In this document: positions 12,607-27,420 of the stretch, one piece after another
Layout: every line of letters begins with the position of its first letter
Numbering within the stretch: position 1 is the stretch's first letter
Notes under the pieces: model-generated
Seen by the model: the letters and a program-made list of their open reading frames with translations, nothing else
Told to the model about the DNA's origin: nothing
Databases searched by the model: none
Position numbers and translations under genes: made by a program
From: Obrimoposthia wandeli
Taxonomy: Eukaryota
Assembly: GCA_977020255.1 (NCBI GenBank)
Contig: CDROCS010001785.1
Location: 1-64,000, forward strand
DNA length: 64,000 nt
Direction: 5' to 3'

Positions 12607-15600
12607 TCAGCCGTTACGCGCATCTCCCCACCCAAATCCACCAGGATTGTTGGCGCCAGCAGCCCCATTAACGGCGGCGCCTCCCTCATCCAGCGGCTCG
12701 TAGTTGGGATCGTGTGCTGGACTCTCAAATATCGACTTCCTGTACCGACAATTGTGTACAATCAACCTAAGCAGACCTCAAGAAGCGGAGGGACCTTCTC
12801 AGCTCATAATCTTATAATTCCAGTTCTAGTACGTACTTACATATATTGCACACAATTAAAGGAAAACTTCTGAAGAAGCCTTTTTAACAAACAAACCGCA
12901 GGGTGTCCACGTTCATCAATAAAACTTTGAGTTTTAACACAAACTACAATTTAAAATCTGACAAAATACGAATCGTAATATCAAAGTTAAAATTGTTTTC
13001 TTTCAATTTATTTTCTAATGTTAATTGCTTTAAGCTTCTACAAAAGAGAAGTTACACATCAAGTGGTAAGTTGAACAATTACCTTTTTGGATAAAAATTA
13101 GTTGGTGTACTGTGGAAATGAGATCATAAGAATGTATTAAAAAATCATCCTAAAATCATTAGGAGAGACCCATACTTACTTCACTATTTAAAAAAATATA
13201 TATATTATTAATATGAGAAATTTCATTAAAAACGTTTTTTTTCAATATACATTGTAATTTGCAACAAAATGTCTCCCAAAACCATTACTTTTAATTTATT
13301 GGTTAAAATATATAATTAATTATTTATTCAATATTTAATTATATGAGTTATCTTATGTCTAAAGAATCGTTAGAAAATAAAAATATAACAATTTTACTAA
13401 TTATTAAAAAAGTCTAGTAGTCGACAATCTTGAAAACTTAGTGAGAATTCCTACTATATTCCAAATTGTTCATAAATGAAAGTAAGATATTATCAAAATT
13501 GTATGCACTGCGTTGGTTATCTATGGATGATATTTAGGTTTCCTGTCGTAGCAAAGAGTACTCCTTTGCACAAATTAGAAAATTTTATGAAGTTGATGGA
13601 GAATTACAAAAGAATCAAAGAATGCTAAAGAATTTGAAAGAAGTCTTCGATATCCCTAAAATTAATGGTTTACTATTATAAAATCCAAATTGAAGGTAGG
13701 AATGGATATTGTACTAGAAAGGTGAGATCAGGTTATTTTTTTATATGTACAAAGTTTGTGCATTTTTGACACTCTTTAATTTTAAATTGGGATGTTAAAA
13801 ATAATGTTACAAAAAATTTTAAAATTCGCTAGCTAGTCTTCGTTTATCGATTCAGTCAAAATTACTTTCTATCCATCAACTGAACAGTGAAGTGTACTTA
13901 CAGAAATCTCGGTGTTCGCAGGATCTTGAAGCCATTAGTTTGTCTAGGAAAGACGTCTTCCAAAAAATAGTAGAGGTGGCCAACACCAATTCCTGTACGA
14001 GACAAAGGCATTTCTCAGTAAGTCCATCTGATGATATATTTTAGTTTTGATAATAGGCATCGTGTGTATGTAATAAGTAGGGCACGTTTTTAATGACATA
14101 TCATACAAAGTCATAATTTTTTCAAATTTGTAGAGCAATTTTTCATAAATTCTTTTTAAATTAGTTTATCTTTGCTTTTTCATATTTTGTTTTTATTTCG
14201 ATTTATAAATACATGTAAAATATAATTTTTAATGCTAGGTCATATTTTTAAAAAACTTTATAGGTCACAAATATTGCCCTTCTAATAAGGCTTAAAAATG
14301 TGTAAAATTATTCTTCATATACAAATAAACAAAATGTTATCAATATTATAAAAACTATTTATTTAAAAATTTAAAGAAATTACCGGGTCTACATTAAACA
14401 CCATTTGAATTTAATTTAGATTGCACAGAGTGAACTTGTAACATTATTACGTAGTGGGGTTAAAAAGTCCTTAGACTGATAGAGATGAAAGAAATTCAGC
14501 TAAAAATGTATATTCAAACATGTAACATTTCATAACATATTTACACTTTTACCAGATGGACTGAAATCTCGACGACATGTTTATCGAATTCAGACGGTTT
14601 TACTAGAACATACGGTCACTGAAATCCAGTTTTGATTCAAATATTTTACCTCGCACATCGCTTGGAACGAAATCAATATTAAATATTGAGCGATCCAGTT
14701 ATACAAAATTGCTTTCATCAACTGTTTGTCAAGTTACATGAGAAGAAAAGACTGGTGCATTGTCACGAAGAAGATAGAGGTTTGTGTTTCTCTTTCACTT
14801 TATCAATTAATAAACAATAATAGACCGAATTTATTGTTTCCTCCATGCCATCATTCAATAAGAGCCCAGTACAGTTTTATGCCTTGTTCCGGATCTAAGG
14901 ACTTTTGCAGGCTTCCCAGTTGAAATAACTCATTCTCGTTTGGAGACAAAGATAAAGAAACGAGAAATAAAGCAGTCATTCTTCGTTTCTTGATCACTAT
15001 TTGTAGAAGTTTTCTCATAATCAATTTCGCTTCTTCTTGTCAAAGACACATGTTACTCACGATGAAAGTTTTCGAATAAAATTAGATATTGTTTGATTTT
15101 TTGTATTTTAATACCCTTTTTCTCTATCTTTCTTACTAAAATAAATCGTATACCACGTGTAAATTCAATGATGTTGTACAATGATTGAAGTAAAACAAAT
15201 TTCATTTAGCTGTTACTTGTTATTAATTAAACATTTTAATTTCATTTCTGAGCCTAATGACTTATTGTCATGGAGCCTGGACGTAGTGGACTCACCGATC
15301 ATGTCGATCAGCACGCTGTTGTTGAGCAAGAAAGAGAATCCAAAGAGCACCCAGGGTAAGTACGGCGCGTGGAAGTTGAAGAGCCCGAAGAAGTTCATTC
15401 TGATGTATGGGTTTCGGCGACTCCAAACGTAGACAATCATTAGGGTGAATGCATGGCCGAGAAATATGACTGCAAAGAATGACCCGATGATCTGCAAATT
15501 TAAATGAGAATTCAATGGGCCACGAATAATATTTGAAAATTAATAATGTTATAGAAAGTGTTAAAATAAAAAAAGGAAGGCCACTTACCATCATGAGGGT

Positions 15601-16569
15601 ACCTCCAAATATGAACATGAGAATGAAGTCGGCTTCTTTGGCTCTGAAATGATTCTCCTCGAGCATCCGACAATAGCGATAGATGAAAATCATGTTGAAA
15701 AAGAAGGTGAAGCCTATTTGGCCGAAGAAGCAGAAATTAGTGACCAGTCTCCAGAGCTGCGAAATCGGGAGAACATTATAATTGGTATATTAGTTATAAT
15801 TTATACTGATGCAAATAAGCAGAAAACTATTTATTTAAAAACCAATATCGGTTTTAAAGGAAAAAAGGCATTATTAAGACAATTAACCGAAATTTCAGGA
15901 AAGACCGAAAAATGACGATATTTTTAAATTAACCGAAATATACAGTAATTTTTAAAACTCATTAACATTAGTCAATTTTGCGATGCCCCCTTATCATTGA
16001 AATGTTAACACAAAGAGAGTTTAACAAAGCAAGCAATAAACAGAGAAAATTAGGAAAATTTTAAATTCTCACCTGATAATTCCGAAAGATGAGTGTTGGA
16101 TTGAAGTAAAGATGCAGTGGAGACACGAAATCTAAATGCTAAATTAAAATGAATTAATAAACTGTCAAAATTACTAAAAATTACAAAATAGTAATGAAAC
16201 AAATGATCAAGTTATTTATTAGATTTAATTAAAATAAAATCTCATAATCGAAATAATAGTTCCAGAATTCGCAATGAGATATATTATATGTGTAAATGTC
16301 AAAATAGTTTTTAAACTTTTACAAAAAACTTAATACTGTTTAGGTATTATTTAGTGATTGACAATCATCAGATATAACAATCATATTATAAAAACTAAGA
16401 GTTTCCTGATTTAATGAGATTGTAAAAGAACTAAAATAGAAAAATCATAAATGATTTAGTCAAAAACATTAGTATCACTTACAACCGCGATTGTTGTCAG
16501 GGCACAAATTGTTGTATAAGCTCTCGTCACTGGTGGAATTTGAATATATTCATCATAAATATGATTCAT
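12607..16569 (-). CDS. DERL2: Derlin-2/3-like ERAD membrane protein, complete, 6 exons, 246 aa
   Basis: Exons 16569-16483, 16138-16073, 15756-15589, 15491-15296, 13992-13902, 12739-12607 (741 nt), all GT-AG and phase-consistent. Translation has [55 protein letters not shown] and PGGFGWG. Confidence 0.96.
14545..14730 (+). mobile_element. possible Gypsy integrase remnant in Derlin intron 4
   Basis: FTRWTEI at ~14547 resembles the integrase FTRWPEA motif; the following sequence is frameshifted. Confidence 0.35.
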
Positions 16570-18825
16570 CCTTAGTAGATATGAAACAATAAATAAACTC
16601 TAATCAAAATAAGAATAAATTATACGTAAAGAAACAATTATATCAATAAAATTTAATGACGTATATTTCAAAATCAAGTCTTTTAAGGTTAATTCATTAC
16701 ATAAAAGGCACATGGACTTTTACTCATATGATTGTTTATCTTAATACAGTTCATTTTTAAAATGTCATATATTTAAAAAGAAGATAGGAACATTTTGGCT
16801 AATTAAATTTATTTAAATTTACCACAATAATAATAATTCAGTTTTCCCAAAATAATTATAAAATTTAGGGCAGTTATAAATGAAAAATTCCAAAACTCAA
16901 TTGTAAGTTCATTACACATGAGCGACATTTTCTATAAACATAATGTCCTTCGTGTTCATAAATTTTATATAATCTTAATATTTAATATTCAAAATTTTGT
17001 ATATTTAAAAAAATTATTTAACATTATTAAATTTAAAGACTTACTTAAAATTTTACTTACATGTTGAGTAAATCTAATGTACAAAAAATGTATTTTAGCA
17101 ATATAGCAATATTTTACTTTGAAATTTTACAAAACTTAAAAAAGCAAAAATAACGAGTAAAATAAGATTAATAAAAAATTTATTATTTGTGTATTAAATA
17201 ATTTTTATATGAAAGAAGCACATTATATAAAAATGAAAATAAATACAAATATAGTATACAGACATTTAAGATGAATATTATTTTTATTTAAATTAACCAC
17301 CATAAAATTTCTATTGCTTTTCTATAAAATTACTTTTATAAAAGTGATTGTTTCTTTTACATTTTTTGTTTGGTAAAATTAAAATGCTTTTTTAAGAAGA
17401 AATGATGAAGTTCAAGGCAGTTATGATAAATGAAAACAGATGGCATGAAATGTAAGTAATCAACCAAATTTACGATTCTTAAATTTAATTATTTTAAAAG
17501 TTAAGATCATATGATTAAAGTGATTATTTTCAAAACACCTTATTTTTAATAATCTTTTTTTAAATGTTAATAACCTAGAAAACGAAAATCTTATCTAAAC
17601 TGACGTATAAATTGTACAAAATATGTTATAACATTATTTTTAAATAAAACTTAATTTTTTTATTTTAGAAACGAAATGTCTTGTAAATCAAATTATGTTA
17701 ACTTTTGGAACATGATAGGGATTTAATATTAATTTTATTCGAATAAAATTTTAACAAAAATAAATGTTTGTTTGAGTAAAATAGTGAACAAAAATAAAAT
17801 TTATGCATAAGTTTGTTTAATAACACAAACCGATCATAAAAACTTAACCTTTAACGGGAAAGTTTAGAGAAAAAGTTCATTTTATGTTTTGTAAAGAATA
17901 TTTAAACTTTTCTATTATAATGTTTCAAATTTCTTTCAATAAATTGTAAAAAAAATCTATTATTAACATTTTTAATGTAAATTTGACAAGATGTGGCCTG
18001 TTAGAAAGCAACATACTAACATTCTCAATCGAGTTCTAAATGTAGTAAATTTTTAAGTTACAGTTTCCAAAATGAATCAAAATATTTCTTCAGAAACTAA
18101 ATTTATACTAGAATTCATAATATTTTAAATTATTACTCTTCACTTCGGGTGGATTTTTTTTTTTAAAACAAATGTATCAAGAATCTTCGAAGCACTTATT
18201 TTATTTGTAAATAATTTTTATATTGTACTCAGGGTATTTCTGTTTTTATTCAAATTTAAGTTATTGATGATAATTGCGTTTAAAAATGTATCTTTATTGT
18301 GTGTTAATTTTTGTCTCACATAGAAGAGTATTTTAATTAAGATTGAAATTCATTTAAAAATTTTAATATAATTTAATAATAATTTATTAAAGTAATAAAA
18401 AATAGGGTAAAAGAGATTTCATGTTTATTTTATAAATATTTTCTTTGATATATAAACGCTAGATTTAGATTAATACGTCTACAAATTGAATATAAATATC
18501 AATATAAAATGATAATTTTTGAGATTTACCAAATGGCGCTTCTAAAAGATATACAATTGAGATGCAATATTAAAAGTAAATCGAAACAAATTTTACCATA
18601 AGTTATCAAAATAAACAAAAAAATTCAAGTACAAATTTCTAAAAATAAGAAGTATACGTCAAACATCAGTGGTATACCGAAGAAATATCACGAAGAATAG
18701 CCGCATTCCGCGACATACTGCATCAGGACTTAACAATACGTGTAAGGTAAGAAACCTATATAAATATTAAGTTTAATTAAAAAGTGCATTCGGTGAACAT
18801 TTTTAGAATCATTTTATTTTGGTCA

Positions 18826-18880
18826 GTTCCCGACCGGCTTATCACCGGTTTCGCCCTGCCGGGCGGCTCATCAGGGAAAC
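18826..18880 (-). ncRNA. type I hammerhead ribozyme (HHR1)
   Basis: Minus strand reads GUUUCC CUGAUGA GCC-GCCCGGCAG-GGC GAA ACCGG-UGAUAAG-CCGGU C^GGGAAC. Core intact; stem I 6 bp, stem II 3 bp with 9-nt loop, stem III 5 bp. GUC cleavage site between 18832 and 18831. Confidence 0.85.
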
Positions 18881-19907
18881 GGCAGGTTATCTCTGACTTC
18901 GCAGTACTTATTTCTGCGAAGCCAGAGATACAAGTGACAGTAGAATGTCACTGTTTGAGATTTGACTGCAGATCGACTGGAATAACTTAGTTCAGTTTGA
19001 TCTGCGATCGAAACAAATTTGATAATATGCGAAATAGCTTTGCAGATCGACTGGACTTCGGTTTCTCTCTACCGCCGCTGCCATCTCTGCATCGCCCATG
19101 CATCCTCCTGCTACCCAGTTGTCTCTGCCCCAGTCACACAACTACTACTGTGTCTTCCACCGATTTGATCAATCGAGTGGCTCCAGGGCTGATGGCTGCT
19201 GCACACGCGATGCTTCTCTCCAGTCTCACTATACTACACTCTGTTGCTGATATTATCTCGTGGTTAGCGACAACAACAATGGCGACTATCCTTGTTGTTG
19301 TTGGATCTGGCAATTACAAGCTGCAGCAGTGCCAGCAGTTCTTCAACCGCTAATACGACAACTTTCAAAATGAATCGTCCTTATGGACTCTGTGTGTGTA
19401 CAGCAACTTTAATTTTCTTCCTACTCTCTCAAACACTTACTCTCTGTTCCATCATGCACTCAATCTCTATTCCATCGTACTTGAATTTGCTGCTCTCGCG
19501 ATTTCACATATTCTCTGCTTGTGCAAGTGGTGCCGCATTGGATACAACAGTTTCGTGTTTGTGTGGTGTATTGGGAGTGGTATGCAGTCGGAAGTTTCTC
19601 CTTCTCTCACAGCACTATTATGTGTAGTTCACCTCTTTTCCCTCATCATGTGTTGGTGTGTCACCACAATATAAGGCAGCAATTCTGCAAGGAAAACAAC
19701 AACATGATAATTGCTAAACCTATCAATAACAATGTACAATTTGCATTTTATGATTATTAAAGCCACTGATCACCATTTTTACCATTTCTTGTTGAAGAAA
19801 AATAAACTGAAGACAAGAAATCTTTTATTGTCAATAAACCCAAAAATTTGATAGTATCGTGACACAAAAAACAAAAACAAAAACTATTATTTCAATATAT
19901 ATATCTA

Positions 19908-20769
19908 TGTAAAAGCAATAAAGAACTAGATATATAACATAAATATCGATTGTTTATAATCATTCCAGATACCTACCGACGTAGAATCGATTTGAAGACA
20001 CTGATTCAGAAGTAATACAGTTGATATAGATTTAGAAGCAATACGGATTTAAAAGTCATATAAATCCAGAAGAGATACAGATTCAGATGTGATACGGATC
20101 AGAGCAACACATCGAAGAGAAACCATTATATAAATATCGGCGGATGAATTGAACTAAGTGTAATAAAGAGATTTGAATTCTCAGTAAAAAAGTAATTGAA
20201 TTGTAATCAAGTGTATTGAACCAAGTGTATTAAAGCGATTTAAATTTGAGGAAAATAATTGGAGTATAGTAAAGCGATTTGAATTGTAGATAAGCAATTC
20301 AAATTTAAGTAAAAGGTATAGTGAATTAAAATCATATTTATTGAGATATCGTAAATAAAACTATAAACGAAAAAAAGTGTCGCAAATTGTTATTTAAATT
20401 AATTCGTACCAGAGATTGTCACCCTACTTTTCTGAAGTTGTAGTTGAGAACACATTTGTTTAAGAGCTCCCCACCTTGTGTATTAAAAATTAATTTAGTT
20501 TTACGAAAAGATCGCATGAATTATATTTTGAAAGATAACTAACCCTCTTGGAACTTTCAGACCCACTAACCTACAGGCTAGACGAGAGCTAACAACGTGA
20601 CGGTGTTCCAAGCCACGGTGTATTCAGAGGATTGTTAAGGCCTGATATATTGGAGGAGCATCGTTAATGTCGCTTGTCTGTAGCTTCGTTTCGTATAGTT
20701 TTGGTCTAGCCTTTAACCAGACCATTTTTGAATTGCTCTTCAAACCAGCCTAACCGGTTCAATACTACA
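19908..20769 (+). mobile_element. probable solo LTR
   Basis: TGTA...TACA termini, TATATAAAT at ~20128, and shared start and end motifs with 2144-2760. No matching TSD found. Confidence 0.55.
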
Positions 20770-21141
20770 ACTGTTGAAAATTAAAATACATGCTCACTGC
20801 ATCGGGATCGAGAGGATCGTATGAATATTTGAATTTTGTGAGATAATACTTTTTGATAATAGGCAGTGTTTTGAAATGTTAAAACATCGAAATATTTGAA
20901 TTTTGGTAAAAAATACTTTTAATAAAAAGTAATATTTTGAATTTACTAACAATGATTGACAAGAAAAAATTAAGCTTAAAAAGTATTAAATAAAAAAAAT
21001 CCATTTAAAAAGAAAAGAAAGTTTAATAAGATTTCTTTAATTAGAAAATTAATTGGATGATTTCCTTTATTAGGGAAATTATTTTTGTTAAAATTCTATG
21101 CACTTTGGCATTTTAGAATGTTTTAGTTAAATAAGTGTACA

Positions 21142-21191
21142 GTCCCCGATAGGCTTAACTGGCTTCGCCTTGCCGGGTTCATCAATGGGAC
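21142..21191 (-). ncRNA. type I hammerhead ribozyme, degenerate copy (HHR2)
   Basis: Minus strand reads GUCCCA UUGAUGA ACC-CGGCAA-GGC GAAG CCAGUUAAGCCUAUC^GGGGAC. Collinear with HHR1 but has core substitutions (C3U, GAAA to GAAG, first stem II G to A) and a broken stem III. Confidence 0.65.
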
Positions 21192-22189
21192 AGCAAGCTT
21201 ATCTTTGGCTTCGCGGTGGGCAAAGCACCCGCAAAGTCAGAGATAAAAAGAGAGGATTTTCCCTCTACCATGTGTCGACAAACAGCATCGACACATGACA
21301 ATAATGTGCATACATACACAAACCAAAACACACACATACAAACATTACATACACCCACTCACATCTACTCACATCTATACTCACTCACCTCTATGTTCTC
21401 TCAGCTACTCTCAGTCTTGTGTATGTGTGTGTATATATTTTATGCAGCACTATTTTCCTCTCTGTCGAGATACGATGCTTGTGGACATATGGACAGTGTG
21501 TGCGGTGGATAGAGCTGATGAAATTTTCCCTACTAATCAGTTTTTGAATCGACACCGGTATGTGTGTGCTGCTATATTGACGCGTACAGACAGCTGTATT
21601 TTGTATTAGTTTTCTTCACTTCTCAGTTTCTGTCTCTGTCCTGAGAGCTTCTATGTATTCTGTCTTGTTTTTCTCGATTTCAGGCCATTTTGTCGATCAA
21701 TAGTCTTGAGGGCTTTACTTTTTCTCTTAGCTTATTCTGCTGTTTTTTCCGATCGCTTCGCACTTTTACTCACACTAATGTTGGCTTATATCATTAATAT
21801 TTTAAGTCAACAACAACTCTTAATTTTAACCCCAAAAATGTATTATTTAATTTTTTTTCTTCTTTTAAGGTTATTATCAGGATATTTTAATTACTATAAA
21901 TATCTTTTATTTATTTCACTTATTCTTATTGCTCTCTGTATGGACCTAACACTATTTATCATTTATTTTATGAACATTTGAAATCACAGCAACTTCCAGA
22001 TACTAAAACTGCAAGTCTCATACCTAGTTTTGATATGGAGCTTAATATTTTTTGGGTATCTAAATTCGTTGTGAAATTTAATGGAGATAAAATATGGTAT
22101 AACATTTATTTGGAATATCAGTAATGTAACAGGAGTCAGCAAAAATAGTGTACACCGCATGATGAGATAAAATAATTAATGAAATATTA

Positions 22190-22236
22190 AATATATATAT
22201 ATATATATATATATAAATATATATAAATATATATAC
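22190..22236. repeat. (AT)n microsatellite
   Basis: Nearly uninterrupted AT dinucleotide run. Confidence 0.9.
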
Positions 22237-24183
22237 ATCCATGCTCATGCTATTATACATGCTATTGTAAAAAGCAATATATCTTTTCCAATTCTCTATA
22301 TTCTAAATTATTGTAATTATATTTTCATTAATACACTGCAGTACTTAAACTTCTAAATGATTATTTGAACACATTTATTTCAACATATTTGTTTATATAA
22401 AATAAATGATACCTATCTATATGTTGTTTATTTTAAATAAATCTATTAAATAACCTATATATATTTTGTATAAAACTGTCATAAAACAAAAGTATTTTAA
22501 TTGTTTAGAATATTTTGTTTAATGTTCTAAGTAGTTGATTTTAAATAAAACACTAATCATTTTGAAAAATTATTTTTAATATAATACATCACATAATGAG
22601 TGTGATAGGTTTTTTTCAGTGTTTGATTTTTTGTTGTATTTTAAAATATTGTTTTAACTAAAAAGTTGAATATTTTTATAAAATTAAAAGAACATTAATA
22701 TTTTGATATTTTAATAAGAAATAATACGTAAGTTTTCTTAGTTTAAAAAAAATTAAAAATCTCCAAGAAGTTACTATGACATATACATCTAATAGTTTTA
22801 TGGCAGGTGACTAAGGAAATTAAATGCAAAATTAGTTTATGCTTATTTGAAAAAGTATGATATATTTATTATATGGTTCAACTTGATATCCATAGAAAAT
22901 AATTCTGCGGAAAGTGCGAGAAAAAAATTTCCTTTAGAAAATAATAAGGAAAATCGATAAATGTTTTATTGATTATATTTTTCAATTTCACATTTGCAGC
23001 ATCCTTAGTTGTTTCTTGAGTTAATATATCATTTTCAAAGCATTGTAACATGAAGTTAATTACGGTGATTGCACAGGACAGGGAACTATACTTGATTTGC
23101 ATACCAAAGACTCTTTGAAAGAAGTATTTAAAAGTATTTTGTTATAGTACTTTTATACTGAAGAATTGTTCAAAGAAATTTTGTTTATTTCTAAAATTAT
23201 GATAAATCCAATCTTGTTAACACACATTAAAAAATATGGTTCATTGTATACGTTTTGCAAATTTAAACAAGAAATTAATTGACATGCATATGTTGTGCTT
23301 TATTAAATATAAAAATACAAATATTGAAATATAATTTTATTATACACAAAAAAATGACCAGAGGGCTAACAATTATTAGAGTTACTAAAAATATTTTGAC
23401 GATGACAATGGTGATAAAATAAAATAATAAAATAATCAAAATTAAATAAAAATGGAACTGATTTTGAAAAATGATATAGTTTATGCTGGCATACCATAAT
23501 TTTTTATTACCGAAATTTCAGGATTTATATACTCTCTCATTTACACGCTGTGCCCGGGTTTTCCTGGTGGGGCTTTTGATTTACATTAGTTTAATCTAAA
23601 TGGGGTTTGTCTATCAATATTAATACTTAATTAGATTCTATTGGGTAACCTGTTAGTATTTGCCTGCTAGTATTGCAAAGTTTTATCTACTTCTTATACT
23701 TTAGGACTTTTTTACCCAAATGTGTGATTTTGATGAGCCGTACATATTTTAATTGGAATTAATTTATGCTTTAAATTGATGTTTTGTTAATTTATGTGCG
23801 ACTTTTAGATGTCTAAAAAGTCTTCATTAAAGTTTAATTAGTTAACGTTTTAATTAACAAAAATCACATTTTTGTAGATCATTCTTAATACAAAAGTTGA
23901 AAAACTTTCGAGCATACGTGAAATAAATCGTTTTTTTATTGCTAATTTATGTGTAGTTCAGATTTTTAAATAAGGTCTTCCTTTAAAAAGTTATTCGTAA
24001 AAAAATGATTTCTACATAAAATGAATTAATATTTTAAACCTATTTTTTTTTGTGGGTCACTAAGTTACTTTTTAATTAGTAGCTTTGTTGGGTTATTAAA
24101 TAAAAATAATTAATTTTTGTCAATTTAAATTGACATTTAATATTTATCAAAAATGCCCACAATTAGGGAGGTTTTCAAGTTCA

Positions 24184-24233
24184 GCCTCCGACGGGGTGGT
24201 CCCGTTTCGCCCTGCCAGGCTCGTCAGGAAGGC
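24184..24233 (-). ncRNA. type I hammerhead ribozyme, canonical (HHR3)
   Basis: Minus strand reads GCCUUC CUGACGA GCCU-GGCA-GGGC GAA ACGGG-ACCAC-CCCGU C^GGAGGC. All core nucleotides present and all three helices paired. GUC cleavage site between 24190 and 24189. Confidence 0.9.
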
Positions 24234-24618
24234 GTCGAGGAAGGTGGTTAGCGGAATGGATTTTTTTCTCGCGAGTGTAAATTGACATTTAATTTTTATG
24301 ACTGGAGATTACTGCCCAGATCTATCTGCTGCCAATGCGAATATGCACATGTGTTTGTGCTGAAACCCATATGCAGATATGCACACACATGCGGAGGTCG
24401 TCCGACTGATACAATAGAGCATTGGATTCTACAAATTCTGAAGCCAGTGCATGTGTTTCTTGACATTTGGCGAGGAGTGGGCGATTTCGATAATCTGAAC
24501 GTCCTGACTGTGTGTCGTCCCTGATTTTCTCGGTTCATGTGTTTAACAAGAATATAAGCTAAAACACAATTTTTCTAAAACACAACTTTTCAACCTGAAA
24601 CAGAATTTATTTGAACCG

Positions 24619-24976
24619 CAGAAAAATATATTTGAAACTATTTATCCACTTCTCACAGAAAAATATATTTGAAACTATTTATCCACTTCTTAAAAATATA
24701 TTTGAAACTATTTATCCACTTCTCACAGAAAAATATATTTGAAACTATTTATCCACTTCTCACAGAAAAATATATTTGAAACTATTTATCCACTTCTCAC
24801 AGAAAAATATATTTGAAACTATTTATCCACTTCTCGCAGAAAAATATATTTGAAACTATTTATCCACTTCTCGCAGAAAAATATATTTGAAACTATTTAT
24901 CCACTTCTCGCAGAAAAATATATTTGAAACTATTTATCCACTTCTCGCAGAAAATTTATTTGAAACCATTTATCCA
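24619..24976. repeat. 37-bp minisatellite, ~10 copies
   Basis: Unit CAGAAAAATATATTTGAAACTATTTATCCACTTCTC(A/G), head to tail with no spacers. One unit is shortened and the last is degenerate. Confidence 0.95.
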
Positions 24977-26454
24977 ATTATATGAAAGTTTGTTGAGTTG
25001 CAATTGTTGGATTTCCCGTCCAACAAATTTAAGTTATTAACAGCTTTATATTTTTTGGATTATCATTTTAATTTTTTTGTTACTTTTATGTTTATTTAAG
25101 TTTAACTTTAACACATATAATGAAATGTTGGTTAAATTAATTAATAGTTATATAATATTAAATCGAAAATTTAAATATTTTATTTATTTATTCTAATCTT
25201 TCTAAAATTTTTCAGATCTTCAATTGTTGAAATGTTTACTGCCCTCTTCCATTTCATAAATTATTTGCGTAAATTTATGTATTCAATGTTAAATAAGTTA
25301 GAATATACAAAGTATTTATTGAATTAGTTTGATTTTGTAAACAATTTGAAAAACACACCTTGAATGAATATAATATATTTTATTTAAATGACCTTTTTAA
25401 ATACTATTAGATAGCCATGTCTTATTGTGTTCATTTATAATTTGAAACATTAATTTTTATTTAGTAACTTTAATCAATTATTTTTTTTGAAACATTATTG
25501 CTTTTGGTTTCATTATTTTGTCAAGTTCCGAATGAATCAAGTATGCAATTGTTTTTATCTTTTGTTAAAACGTGTTTTTAATTAGGTTATAAACACTCAG
25601 CCTGGTTAGTGAAGCATTTTATTTAATTTTTAAAAATTGTTTCTAAATACATAGTATATTATTTAATTATAACTAATATTTGTCTTTATATGATAAAGTG
25701 GGGTTTTGATGATTTGTTTAACTTTGTTTTAGTCTGTAAATGAATATTTAGAAAGGCAAAATGAGTTTATCAACTGTGGGACTCTGACTTGTGATTTGAG
25801 AAGGTTTATAGATATTTCGTTATGAATGAATATGAAAAGTTTAAATATTTTTCATCTCCATCGTCACTCGATGAATTTCTGCGCTTATTATCATTTAAAA
25901 GTAAAAAAATGATTTTTAATATACATTTCGGTAATGTTGGAGCAAGTTCTGCCGATATTCGCGTATCTTGCGAGGGTTGAGTAGGCTGTAGCTCTCTTGG
26001 TTTCAGTTGAGCCTCCAGGGACATCTCACAGAACATATGCAACTGTTCCTGTGTGTCTAGGGTTGTTATTTCACTGCCACTGTCCTCTTCACGCTGCTGA
26101 TCTATGTCGCAAATCAAGTTTTAGCAGAAAAAACACTTTCATGGACTCGATGAAGCCCCAAGGAGCAAATGAGCCAGCAACAACACATCGGAATAATAAC
26201 ATGAACAGCAGCATATTTGATTAGCGCTGATGTATGATGCATCTGTGATTGATTACTCAAAAGCGCGTCCAGTTTGCTGTCACTCTTCTCCCTTAATCTT
26301 TCATTTTGTTTTCACCGCTGTTACAGTTTCTTCCATCCAAAGATAAACCGTTGACCAATCCTAAGATGCATGCACGTGCTCACTGCACCAGGCTCGATAA
26401 GATTGTATCCATAATTGGGCTGTTGTGAGAGAATTCATTTATGATAATAATTGG

Positions 26455-27420
26455 GAGCTGGAAATCAATTCTGGTATTGGTCGGTAGCCAATGGAGCTTC
26501 ATTAGATGTACAGTTGTAATAAAACTTTTGTTTATTTTGAATATAATTCTGTCAGTTTGGTTTAAAACTGTTTACAAGCGATATAATTGAGGCAGGATTT
26601 TACACATAGAATTTATACAGAGAATTTAATTTCTTTTGAAAGTGTTGAAGACCTTAAAGTCACATTTAAGAAATTTTTGGATATTCTAGTTAATAGTAAG
26701 ATACAAGTTTATACAAAAACAATACATTTAACTATGATTTATTCAAAAGCACTTCCTGTTTTCCATTATTCTTTGTAATGTTTTCTGAACAGTAAAGTTT
26801 TCAACAATGTTACAGTTTCTTGTCTAAGTCGGACAATTGTTGTTAAGATTTGAAGCATAATTTGCGATCGTATAAATATTTGAGCTTTGTGAGAGAATAC
26901 ATTTTTGATAAAAACATGATATTGAAATCAATTCTGGCCAATGGAGTTTCATTAAATATTCACTTGTACTAACAATTTTCTCTAATTTGAATATAATTCC
27001 GAAGGCTTTGTTTATCATTTTGTGTAAGTGATTTAATTGATAAGCTGGAATATTGAACAGTAAAGAATTTTGAAAATCCAGCCATGATGTAATAATCGCA
27101 TGTGTTAGCAGTTTAGTTGTCACGAGTAGTAAAGGATTTTCTTATTAGTTAAATCCTTAATATGACCTTTGCTTTATTTTGCTTTTTTCTTTAATACTGT
27201 TCTTAGGAACTCTTTATCGAGCCAAAGTAATAGATCCAAATAATATAGCCACAGTTTTATTTCAAATGTCTTCATTTCATCCATGTAGCTATTTCATATT
27301 CATTAGAATCACAATCAACACAAAGTTGTGTGTCATCAGCATAAGGGGAGAAATGAATATTATATTTCTTATTAATCGCTGCGATTGACGAAATATAAAT
27401 CGAAAATAGGTATTCAGAAT
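26455..27420 (-). mobile_element. L2/CR1-type LINE, reverse transcriptase C-terminal fragment
   Basis: HFSPYADDTQL (YADD at 27343-27332), then TKLLTHAIITSWLDFQNSLLFNIPAYQLNHLHK..LHWP, and a second LMKLHWLPTNTRIDF at ~26500. Confidence 0.85.

What the first reader, a model, noticed from the sequence alone, without database searches (positions are those of the whole stretch)
24184..24233. HHR3: fully canonical, probably active monomeric hammerhead
Every core nucleotide (CUGACGA, GAAA, GUC) is present, and all three helices pair (6, 4 and 5 bp). The two G-U wobbles are valid pairs only on the minus strand, which indicates the functional polarity. Neighbouring transposons are heavily decayed, so an intact 50-nt catalytic motif suggests selection or recent origin (inference). 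Stem III is long enough that dimerisation should not be needed, unlike minimal metazoan type I motifs.
Basis: partly seen in the sequence, partly recalled or inferred. Interest (0 to 1): 0.8.

Follow-up and report, generated by a model that had tools for sequence, protein, structure and literature searches.

The report
Backward hammerhead ribozyme in solo LTR
The 50-base self-cutting RNA motif is real, but it is inherited cargo of a leftover terminal repeat from a very abundant virus-like jumping gene, on the strand opposite that element's genes; I found no report of this placement for animals, and no cutting has been shown.

Summary
Window 24233->24184 (minus strand) holds a complete type I hammerhead: every core nucleotide, helices of 6, 4 and 5 bp, and cleavage predicted after C24190.

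It is not a free-standing locus.
- It is nt 99-148, on the antisense strand, of a 957-bp solo LTR (24086-25042, TG..CA ends, 4-bp target duplication GCTT).
- The LTR comes from a ~13-kb Ty3/gypsy-type retroelement that carries an envelope-like gene.
- About 3,700 exact matches to the motif exist in this 1.35-Gb genome.
- Every parent element and lineage I could orient has it 60-160 nt inside the U3 edge, opposite gag-pol.

LTR lineages whose flanks no longer align keep the core and show compensatory changes at five helix positions. Old copies decay. This points to selection on the active element, not on this locus.

The window copy is slightly degraded. One substitution weakens helix II and another breaks a likely loop II/5'-flank tertiary pairing. 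A 95%-identical second copy of the region has the motif scrambled, though reads do not verify that.

No RNA data were available, so neither cleavage nor purpose is shown. The scan had already found this antisense LTR hammerhead many times on other DNA of the same genome.

The parts
24184..24233 (-). HHR3: type I hammerhead motif. Helix I 24233-24228 / 24189-24184; core CUGACGA 24227-24221; helix II and GGCA loop 24220-24209; GAAA 24208-24205; helix III 24204-24192; U16.1 at 24191; C17 at 24190. Predicted cut between 24190 and 24189.
24086..25042 (+). Solo LTR (957 bp, TG..CA ends) of a ~13-kb Ty3/gypsy-type retroelement family that carries an envelope-like gene. The element's sense strand is the window plus strand, so HHR3 lies antisense at LTR nt 99-148.
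   Evidence: The left edge 24085/24086 is shared by 29 copies, and the right edge 25042 by several. The first 237 nt match the LTR of full element A. No PBS or PPT adjoins the LTR (direct reading).
24082..24085 (.). Left copy of the 4-bp target-site duplication GCTT
   Evidence: direct reading
25043..25046 (.). Right copy of the 4-bp target-site duplication GCTT
   Evidence: direct reading
24234..24237 (-). 5' flank of helix I (CGAC here). The nearest family copies have CGCC and other lineages have (C)UGCC, the complement of loop II GGCA. This is the putative pseudoknot partner; the window's own change at 24235 breaks it.
   Evidence: PMC3088659
24548..25028 (.). Array of 37-bp tandem repeats inside the LTR, variable between copies
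18826..18880 (-). HHR1: intact sister hammerhead in an LTR fragment of a second lineage (loop III UGAUAAG), same antisense placement
21140..21197 (-). HHR2: decayed hammerhead (UUGAUGA, GAAG) of an older LTR lineage

Best explanation
SHOWN. HHR3 is the hammerhead carried on the antisense strand of every LTR lineage sampled from one clade of ~13-kb Ty3/gypsy-type retroelements. These elements encode a gag with a CCHC knuckle, a Monjiviricetes-type fusion glycoprotein, PR-RT-RNaseH-INT, an unknown ORF and an RNase T-like exonuclease. The window copy is a solo LTR left by LTR-LTR recombination.

INFERRED, mechanism. The motif can fold only in RNA transcribed backwards through the LTR: from an antisense start in the LTR, or from read-in from flanking DNA. 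There it cuts itself after GUC. This leaves a 5' piece ending in a 2',3'-cyclic phosphate and a downstream RNA with a 5'-OH that starts about 105 nt before the outer (U3) edge of the LTR.

INFERRED, purpose (about 40% likely). In active elements the cut uncouples cap from body in antisense or read-in transcripts. That would limit antisense RNA able to pair with the genomic RNA and feed RNA silencing, or to interfere with sense transcription.

At this locus the motif is inherited cargo with no demonstrated host role. With a weakened helix II and a broken tertiary partner, it probably cleaves at high Mg2+ but poorly under physiological conditions.
For: Repeat status: at least 1,658 first-look candidates at 93-96% identity, and 3,701 exact matches to the motif pattern against 0 for the reversed control.

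Parent elements: 835-1,263-bp direct LTRs, 98.8-98.9% identical, each holding the motif or its position, flank 12 kb of ORFs on the opposite strand. Pfam finds RVT_1, RNase H, integrase, aspartic protease, PF24664 and RNase_T.

Polarity: a PBS sits next to the 5' LTR and a PPT-like GGAGGAT next to the 3' LTR. The reverse complement of the PPT region follows the LTR edge downstream of the ribozyme in three further lineages.

Solo LTR: shared edges, TG..CA ends and TSD GCTT.

Selection on the element: between the HHR3 and HHR1 LTR lineages only the 53-nt hammerhead aligns. Their 3' ORFs are only 43-50% identical. Among 31 distinct sequences from 54 loci, double compensatory changes occur at 2.3/1.3, 2.4/1.4, 2.5/1.5, 2.6/1.6 and 15.3/16.3. 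In the old HHR2 lineage, 14 of 20 copies have lost even a relaxed motif.

Strand and constraint: U.G pairs in 16 of 31 sequences fit only this strand. Open frames across the motif are in different frames in HHR1 and HHR3, so coding constraint is excluded.

Pseudoknot module: (U)GCC 5' of helix I complements loop II GGCA. The same pairing occurs in prokaryote and phage hammerheads with an identical stem-loop II. PMC3088659 shows experimentally that such pseudoknots matter.
Against: - No RNA run could be found, so antisense transcription and cleavage are untested.
- The Rfam score is below the gathering threshold.
- The window copy differs from all 29 nearest copies at 24217 and 24235. With natural flanks its ribozyme fold is 3.3 kcal/mol above the MFE, and a competing GGAGG/CCUCC hairpin forms.
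- Within the young subfamily, variation inside the motif (1.2%) is not clearly lower than outside it (2.0%).
- Three contigs from another organism hold related elements (pol 59-60% identical, same gene order) but no hammerhead. The ribozyme is therefore dispensable for this kind of element.
- No antisense ORF or known antisense function gives the cut an obvious purpose.
Confidence: 0.7

Rival explanations
1. Functionless hitch-hiker. An ancestor LTR captured a hammerhead-bearing fragment once, and the motif persists only because the families are young and copy one another.
For: All copies belong to one element clade. There is no depletion of variation within the subfamily. Related elements in another organism lack the motif. 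A 16-nt direct repeat flanks the 135-nt module in the window, which could be a footprint of insertion or duplication.
Against: The core is retained and five helix positions show compensatory pairs across lineages whose flanks and 3' ORFs are deeply diverged. Old dead copies lose the motif quickly.
Confidence: 0.2
2. Retrozyme-like circle formation. Transcripts spanning two co-oriented ribozymes (both LTRs, or neighbouring solo LTRs) are cut at both sites and ligated into circular RNA that serves mobility or regulation.
For: There are two ribozymes per element in the same orientation. Plant LTR retrozymes work this way (PMC4918200). Three co-oriented motifs lie within 5.4 kb of one another in the window.
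Against: The excised RNA would be ~13 kb and antisense to PBS and PPT, so it could not be primed like a retrozyme. The elements are autonomous and coding. No short unit bounded by two ribozymes was seen.
Confidence: 0.06
3. Host exaptation. HHR3, with HHR1, acts as an insulator that cuts upstream read-through transcripts before the Derlin gene on the same strand.
For: Derlin-like exons lie on the minus strand at about 15213-15693, downstream of the three motifs in their sense direction.
Against: This is one of about 3,700 copies, in a solo LTR of ordinary structure. The 95%-identical second copy of the region has HHR3 and HHR1 disrupted, if that assembly is right.
Confidence: 0.03
4. The conserved feature is not the ribozyme. 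It is instead a plus-strand RNA structure, a DNA binding site or a coding frame in U3.
For: It is a GC-rich island (72% GC) in a window of 30.6% GC. Open frames cross it on the plus strand.
Against: The frames differ between lineages, and the loops differ in length by non-multiples of 3. U.G pairs would be A.C on the plus strand. The invariant unpaired bases are exactly the hammerhead catalytic core.
Confidence: 0.02

Closest known systems
Plant LTR retrozymes (PMC4918200)
   Same: A hammerhead sits inside both LTRs of a retroelement linked to Ty3/gypsy. Both have 4-bp TSDs and TG..CA LTR ends.
   Different: Retrozymes are small, non-coding and non-autonomous. They carry type III hammerheads on the same strand as PBS and PPT, and they are known mainly from plants. 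Here the element is a 13-kb autonomous animal element, the ribozyme is type I, and it lies on the opposite strand.
Metazoan non-LTR retrozymes and Penelope-like element pLTR hammerheads (PMC7229834; bioRxiv 10.64898/2026.07.22.740005)
   Same: A type I hammerhead carried in very many copies by an animal retroelement.
   Different: Those are 150-450-bp tandem repeats or pseudo-LTRs without PBS or PPT, with larger TSDs, and are linked to RT plus GIY-YIG elements. Many have a 1-2-bp helix III and act as dimers. Here there are true LTRs, a PR-RT-RH-INT pol and a 5-bp helix III.
Pseudoknot-stabilised hammerheads of bacteria and phages (PMC3088659)
   Same: An identical stem-loop II (GCCC-GGCA-GGGC) pairs with a UGCC partner. 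It was found in 17 metagenome and 4 IMG/VR contigs. Helix I is 2 bp longer than helix II.
   Different: Many of those are type III, with the partner in loop I. Here the partner is the 5' tail of an open helix I. The window copy has lost the pairing.
Rfam RF00163 Hammerhead_1
   Same: Full-length alignment over the same coordinates, with all core positions matched.
   Different: The score is 22.2 bits, below the gathering score of 34. Helix III and its loop are longer than in the model.
[quoted passage not shown]
   Same: A retroelement that carries a self-cleaving ribozyme as part of its own sequence.
   Different: Those belong to a different ribozyme class, lie on the sense strand and process the element's own RNA.

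Membership tests
Hammerhead ribozyme, type I | Catalytic core C3 U4 G5 A6 N7 G8 A9, G12 A13 A14, A15.1-U16.1 and H17 | tested here: met
   Direct reading; RF00163 alignment
Hammerhead ribozyme, type I | Three helices around the core; helix I open, helices II and III closed by loops | tested here: met
   6, 4 and 5 bp. The canonical fold is 1.1 kcal/mol above the MFE.
Hammerhead ribozyme, type I | Helices supported by covariation | tested here: met
   Across family lineages there are double compensatory changes at four helix I positions and one helix III position. Helix II was held invariant by the search design.
Hammerhead ribozyme, type I | Rfam RF00163 gathering score | tested here: not met
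   22.2 bits against 34; no hit in the whole-window scans
Hammerhead ribozyme, type I | Tertiary contact between helices I and II, needed for fast cleavage at low Mg2+ | tested here: inconclusive
   Other lineages have a (C)UGCC:GGCA(G) complement. The window copy has CGAC, which gives 2 of 4 pairs. No covariation is available for this pairing.
Hammerhead ribozyme, type I | Site-specific self-cleavage | not testable with these tools
   No RNA runs were listed. The runs that were laid are contigs, which cannot show RNA ends.
LTR retrozyme | Hammerhead in both LTRs; 4-bp TSD | tested here: met
   Element A has the motif in both LTRs. The window solo LTR has TSD GCTT.
LTR retrozyme | Type III hammerhead on the same strand as PBS and PPT | tested here: not met
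   The ribozyme is type I and antisense to PBS, PPT and the ORFs.
LTR retrozyme | Short, non-coding, non-autonomous unit | tested here: not met
   Elements of about 13 kb with gag, a glycoprotein, pol and an exonuclease
Non-LTR retrozyme / Penelope-like element | Short tandem repeats or pLTRs without PBS or PPT; PLE-type RT with GIY-YIG | tested here: not met
   Dispersed true LTRs with PBS and PPT. Pol is PR-RT-RH-INT.
Ty3/gypsy solo LTR | TG..CA ends, a short TSD, and homology to LTRs flanking PR-RT-RH-INT | tested here: met

The most novel reading that the evidence does not exclude
A clade of animal endogenous-retrovirus-like Ty3/gypsy elements maintains a pseudoknot-stabilised type I hammerhead on the antisense strand of U3. 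It would work as an active device that cuts antisense and read-in transcripts, protecting the element from double-stranded-RNA-triggered silencing or from transcriptional interference. This would be a ribozyme used by an autonomous LTR retroelement against RNA of the opposite strand.
Probability: 0.3. Interest if true: 0.8.

Novelty: new variant of a known kind. Interest (0 to 1): 0.5.

Why it matters
In the papers I could search, eukaryotic hammerheads are tied to non-autonomous retrozymes (plants: LTR type, type III, sense strand) and to Penelope-like or non-LTR repeats (animals: type I).

This case is different. A type I hammerhead is conserved, with compensatory changes, in the true LTRs of an autonomous animal gypsy-type element that carries an envelope-like gene, and it lies on the strand opposite the genes.

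If it cleaves in vivo, it would be a new way for a retroelement to use a ribozyme: acting on antisense RNA rather than processing its own genome. It would also give a testable link between ribozymes and control of antisense transcription or RNA silencing.

For this particular 50-nt locus the message is sobering. It is one slightly degraded copy among thousands, not a host-selected element.

Tried and rejected
1. Chance motif: rejected.
2. Penelope-like element or non-LTR retrozyme, my first guess: rejected once the 13-kb element with PR-RT-RH-INT and true LTRs was found.
3. Coding constraint from plus-strand ORFs across the motif: rejected, because the frames differ between lineages.
4. Selection signal within the nearest 29 copies: not informative. 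Variation is 1.2% inside against 2.0% outside, and the family is too young.
5. RNA evidence: no RNA run was listed.
6. The C870 variant: none was listed for it. The four runs laid are short Logan contigs that leave the variant core uncovered. Their loose ends read the intact type, but single-copy coverage is sparse, so there is no verdict.
7. CpG hypermutation as the cause of the scrambled motif in C870: insufficient. CpG sites differ at 6.5% against 4.0% elsewhere.
8. Cross-species conservation: three contigs of related elements from one ENA assembly have no hammerhead, by Rfam at E<=10 and by my scan. An LTR pair was seen in only one of them, so this is weak negative evidence.
9. Pseudoknot covariation through the HHR2 lineage: the copies are too decayed to use.
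I used the PPT-edge signature in 440-nt loci instead.

Full report
**1. The observation**

On the minus strand, 24233->24184 reads GCCUUC / CUGACGA / GCCU-GGCA-GGGC / GAAA / CGGG-ACCAC-CCCG / UC / GGAGGC. All hammerhead core positions are present, and the topology is type I (helix I open).
- The helices are 6, 4 and 5 bp. Each of helices I and II has one U.G pair that would be A.C on the other strand.
- Rfam Hammerhead_1 aligns over exactly these 50 nt when only the neighbourhood is searched: 22.2 bits, E=0.0019, below the gathering score of 34. It is not reported in the whole-window scans.
- My own scan, which requires the core plus three helices, finds two motifs in the window (this one and 18826-18880). 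The mean over 300 shuffles that keep local composition is 0.013.
- The canonical fold of the 50-mer is 1.1 kcal/mol above the MFE. The MFE pairs GACG of the core with CGUC at the cleavage site.

**2. What it belongs to**

The surrounding 141 nt has at least 1,658 first-look candidates in the 1.35-Gb genome, and the 40 that were scored are 93-100% identical to it.
- The copies share sharp edges at window 24085/24086, and in several copies at 25042.
- Pairs of copies about 13 kb apart on the same contig led me to full elements. In C1824, direct repeats of 835-890 bp (98.9% identical), each with the motif, flank 12 kb whose long ORFs all lie on the opposite strand.
- Pfam assigns aspartic protease, RVT_1, RNase H, integrase zinc-binding and core domains. 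It also assigns a Monjiviricetes-type fusion glycoprotein (PF24664, split into two frames in this copy) and an RNase T-like exonuclease.
- A PBS-like TGGTGAGC... follows the 5' LTR, and GGAGGAT precedes the 3' LTR. The LTRs begin with TG and end with CA.
- The ribozyme is therefore antisense to the element and lies near the U3 edge.
- In the window, the LTR runs from 24086 to 25042 and is flanked by GCTT on both sides. No PBS or PPT adjoins it, so it is a solo LTR, with HHR3 at LTR nt 99-148.

**3. Is the ribozyme maintained?**

HHR1 at 18826-18880 belongs to a second lineage with at least 673 candidates. Its full element (C2803) has 1,263-bp LTRs and the same gene order. Gag-pol is 87-97% identical to the first element, but the 3' ORFs are only 43-50% identical. 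The motif is again antisense, 72-111 nt inside the LTR.

Between the two LTR lineages, only the 53-nt hammerhead aligns.

A pattern covering the core and stem-loop II gives 3,701 exact matches genome-wide, a few of them the same site counted twice. The reversed control gives 0. At least six helix III and loop III variants appear.

Among 31 distinct sequences from 54 loci, these pairs alternate:
- 2.3/1.3: U-A (18) and C-G (8)
- 2.4/1.4: C-G (23) and U-A (7)
- 2.5/1.5: C-G (15) and U-A (14)
- 2.6/1.6: G-C (25) and A-U (4)
- 15.3/16.3: G-C (16) and C-G (11)

These sequences share descent, so they represent perhaps four or five independent lineages, not 31 events.

In three further lineages the reverse complement of the PPT region follows the LTR edge downstream of the ribozyme. 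This confirms antisense placement there too.

Old copies of the HHR2 lineage (79-85% identity) have mostly lost the motif: 14 of 20 lack even a relaxed version.

Taken together, active elements keep the ribozyme and dead copies lose it.

Coding constraint is excluded because the plus-strand frames across the motif differ between lineages.

**4. State of the window copy**

Against its 29 nearest relatives, the window's 236-nt block has seven differences that at least 27 of them lack.
- The change at 24217 turns a helix II C-G pair into U.G.
- The change at 24235 alters the tetranucleotide just 5' of helix I.
- In other lineages that tetranucleotide is (C)UGCC, the complement of loop II GGCA. 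In the HHR3 subfamily it is CGCC (3 pairs). In the window it is CGAC (2 pairs).
- The same UGCC:GGCA partnership, with an identical stem-loop II, occurs in 17 metagenome and 4 IMG/VR contigs of high GC. Many of these are type III hammerheads with UGCC in loop I.
- PMC3088659 shows that such pseudoknots stabilise the active fold, and that shortening them lowers the rate 20-fold to more than 100-fold at 0.5 mM Mg2+.
- With natural flanks, the ribozyme fold of the window copy is 3.3 kcal/mol above the MFE. The gap is 2.1 for its closest relatives and 0-1.6 for the other lineages with clean comparisons.
- A GGAGG/CCUCC hairpin just 3' of the cut competes with helix I.

I therefore expect cleavage at high Mg2+ and weak activity under cellular conditions. 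This is an inference.

**5. Second copy of the region**

C870:261500-271499 is colinear with window 16320-26475 at 95% identity, and it shares the two substitutions above.
- In that copy HHR3 differs at 13 of 50 positions (binomial P about 8e-8 against the 4.1% background). HHR1 differs at 6 of 55 (P about 0.02). The already dead HHR2 differs at 2 of 58.
- CpG decay does not explain this: CpG sites differ at 6.5% against 4.0% elsewhere.
- I could not verify the variant. No run was listed for it.
- The short contigs of four runs, all from one sample, leave its core uncovered. Their loose ends read the intact type.
- The difference is therefore either real local scrambling or an assembly error. 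Either way it gives no support for host-level conservation.

**6. Outside this genome**

The nearest pol relatives (59-60% identity, all from one ENA assembly) have the same gag-glycoprotein-pol order but no hammerhead. The motif therefore appears to be a lineage-specific acquisition.

**7. Comparison with the literature**

In the papers searched:
- Hammerheads in LTRs are described for plant retrozymes, which are type III, sense-strand and non-autonomous (PMC4918200).
- Animal type I motifs are assigned to non-LTR retrozymes and Penelope-like elements that lack LTR, PBS and PPT (PMC7229834; PMC7761336; the 2026 preprint).
- I found no report of a hammerhead in an autonomous animal LTR element, nor of an antisense one. 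Failing to find one in this library does not prove that none exists.

**8. Earlier notes**

After forming this reading, I found that the scan had reached the same picture many times on other pieces of this genome. I did not use those notes as evidence, except that one title pointed me to the loop II pairing.

**9. Verdict**

This is a real, structurally complete hammerhead. It is ordinary as a locus: a degraded solo-LTR copy. It is unusual as a family feature, whose function remains unproven.

Noticed in passing
L094 (G000:C870:261500-271499) vs window 16320-26475: A 10-kb, 95%-identical second copy (paralogue or uncollapsed haplotype) in which the differences pile up in the two intact hammerheads: HHR3 13 of 50, HHR1 6 of 55, dead HHR2 2 of 58, against a 4.1% background. 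The variant is not supported by the contigs of four runs, so it may be an assembly error.
   Followed up: partly
L031+L034 (C1824:2042000-2060500); L050+L049+L038 (C2803:54000-76126): The parent element has an unusual gene set. A Monjiviricetes-type fusion glycoprotein (PF24664) lies between gag and pol, and an RNase T-like exonuclease ORF lies just before the 3' LTR. Gag-pol is 87-97% identical between two lineages, but the 3' ORFs are only 43-50% identical, which suggests recombinant mosaics.
   Followed up: partly
window 24126-24141 and 24278-24293 (minus strand): An exact 16-nt direct repeat, ATTAAATGTCAATTTA, brackets the 136-nt segment that holds HHR3 (0.05 expected by chance). It could be a footprint of how the ribozyme module entered or was duplicated in this LTR subfamily. 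The upstream copy is absent from the other HHR3-type lineages whose flank I read (L058, L063, L065).
   Followed up: partly
L095-L115 (metagenome and IMG/VR contigs): Hammerheads from prokaryotes and phages carry exactly the same helix II and loop (GCCC-GGCA-GGGC), with a UGCC partner in loop I or a flank. The animal LTR ribozyme thus uses a widespread pseudoknot module.
   Followed up: partly
window 24150-24189 (minus strand): In HHR3-type lineages, the 3' strand of helix I (GGAGG) can instead pair with CCUCC 13 nt downstream. This is a possible post-cleavage or competing hairpin. It is conserved in L052, L058, L059, L063, L065 and L068.
   Followed up: partly
window 18880-18960 and 21200-21270 (minus strand); L051-L070: HHR1-type, UUAAG-type and CUUUUUU-type lineages share a hairpin followed by CAGAGAUAA just 5' of the ribozyme, and an AAAUGCCAAAGUGCAU block 3' of it. 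HHR3-type lineages lack both.
   Followed up: no
window ~15213-15693 (minus strand): Derlin-like exons (YVWSRRNP...YLPWVL) lie downstream of the three co-oriented hammerheads on the same strand. With thousands of copies in the genome, this is probably coincidence.
   Followed up: no
G000:C46:2105-37063 (listing): Motif spacings of 4.1, 6.7 and 13.3 kb recur twice in the same order. This suggests a tandem duplication that includes deleted derivatives of the element.
   Followed up: no
window 24548-25028: An array of 37-bp tandem repeats inside the LTR. Other LTR subfamilies carry 50-, 68- or 101-bp arrays at the equivalent place.
   Followed up: no
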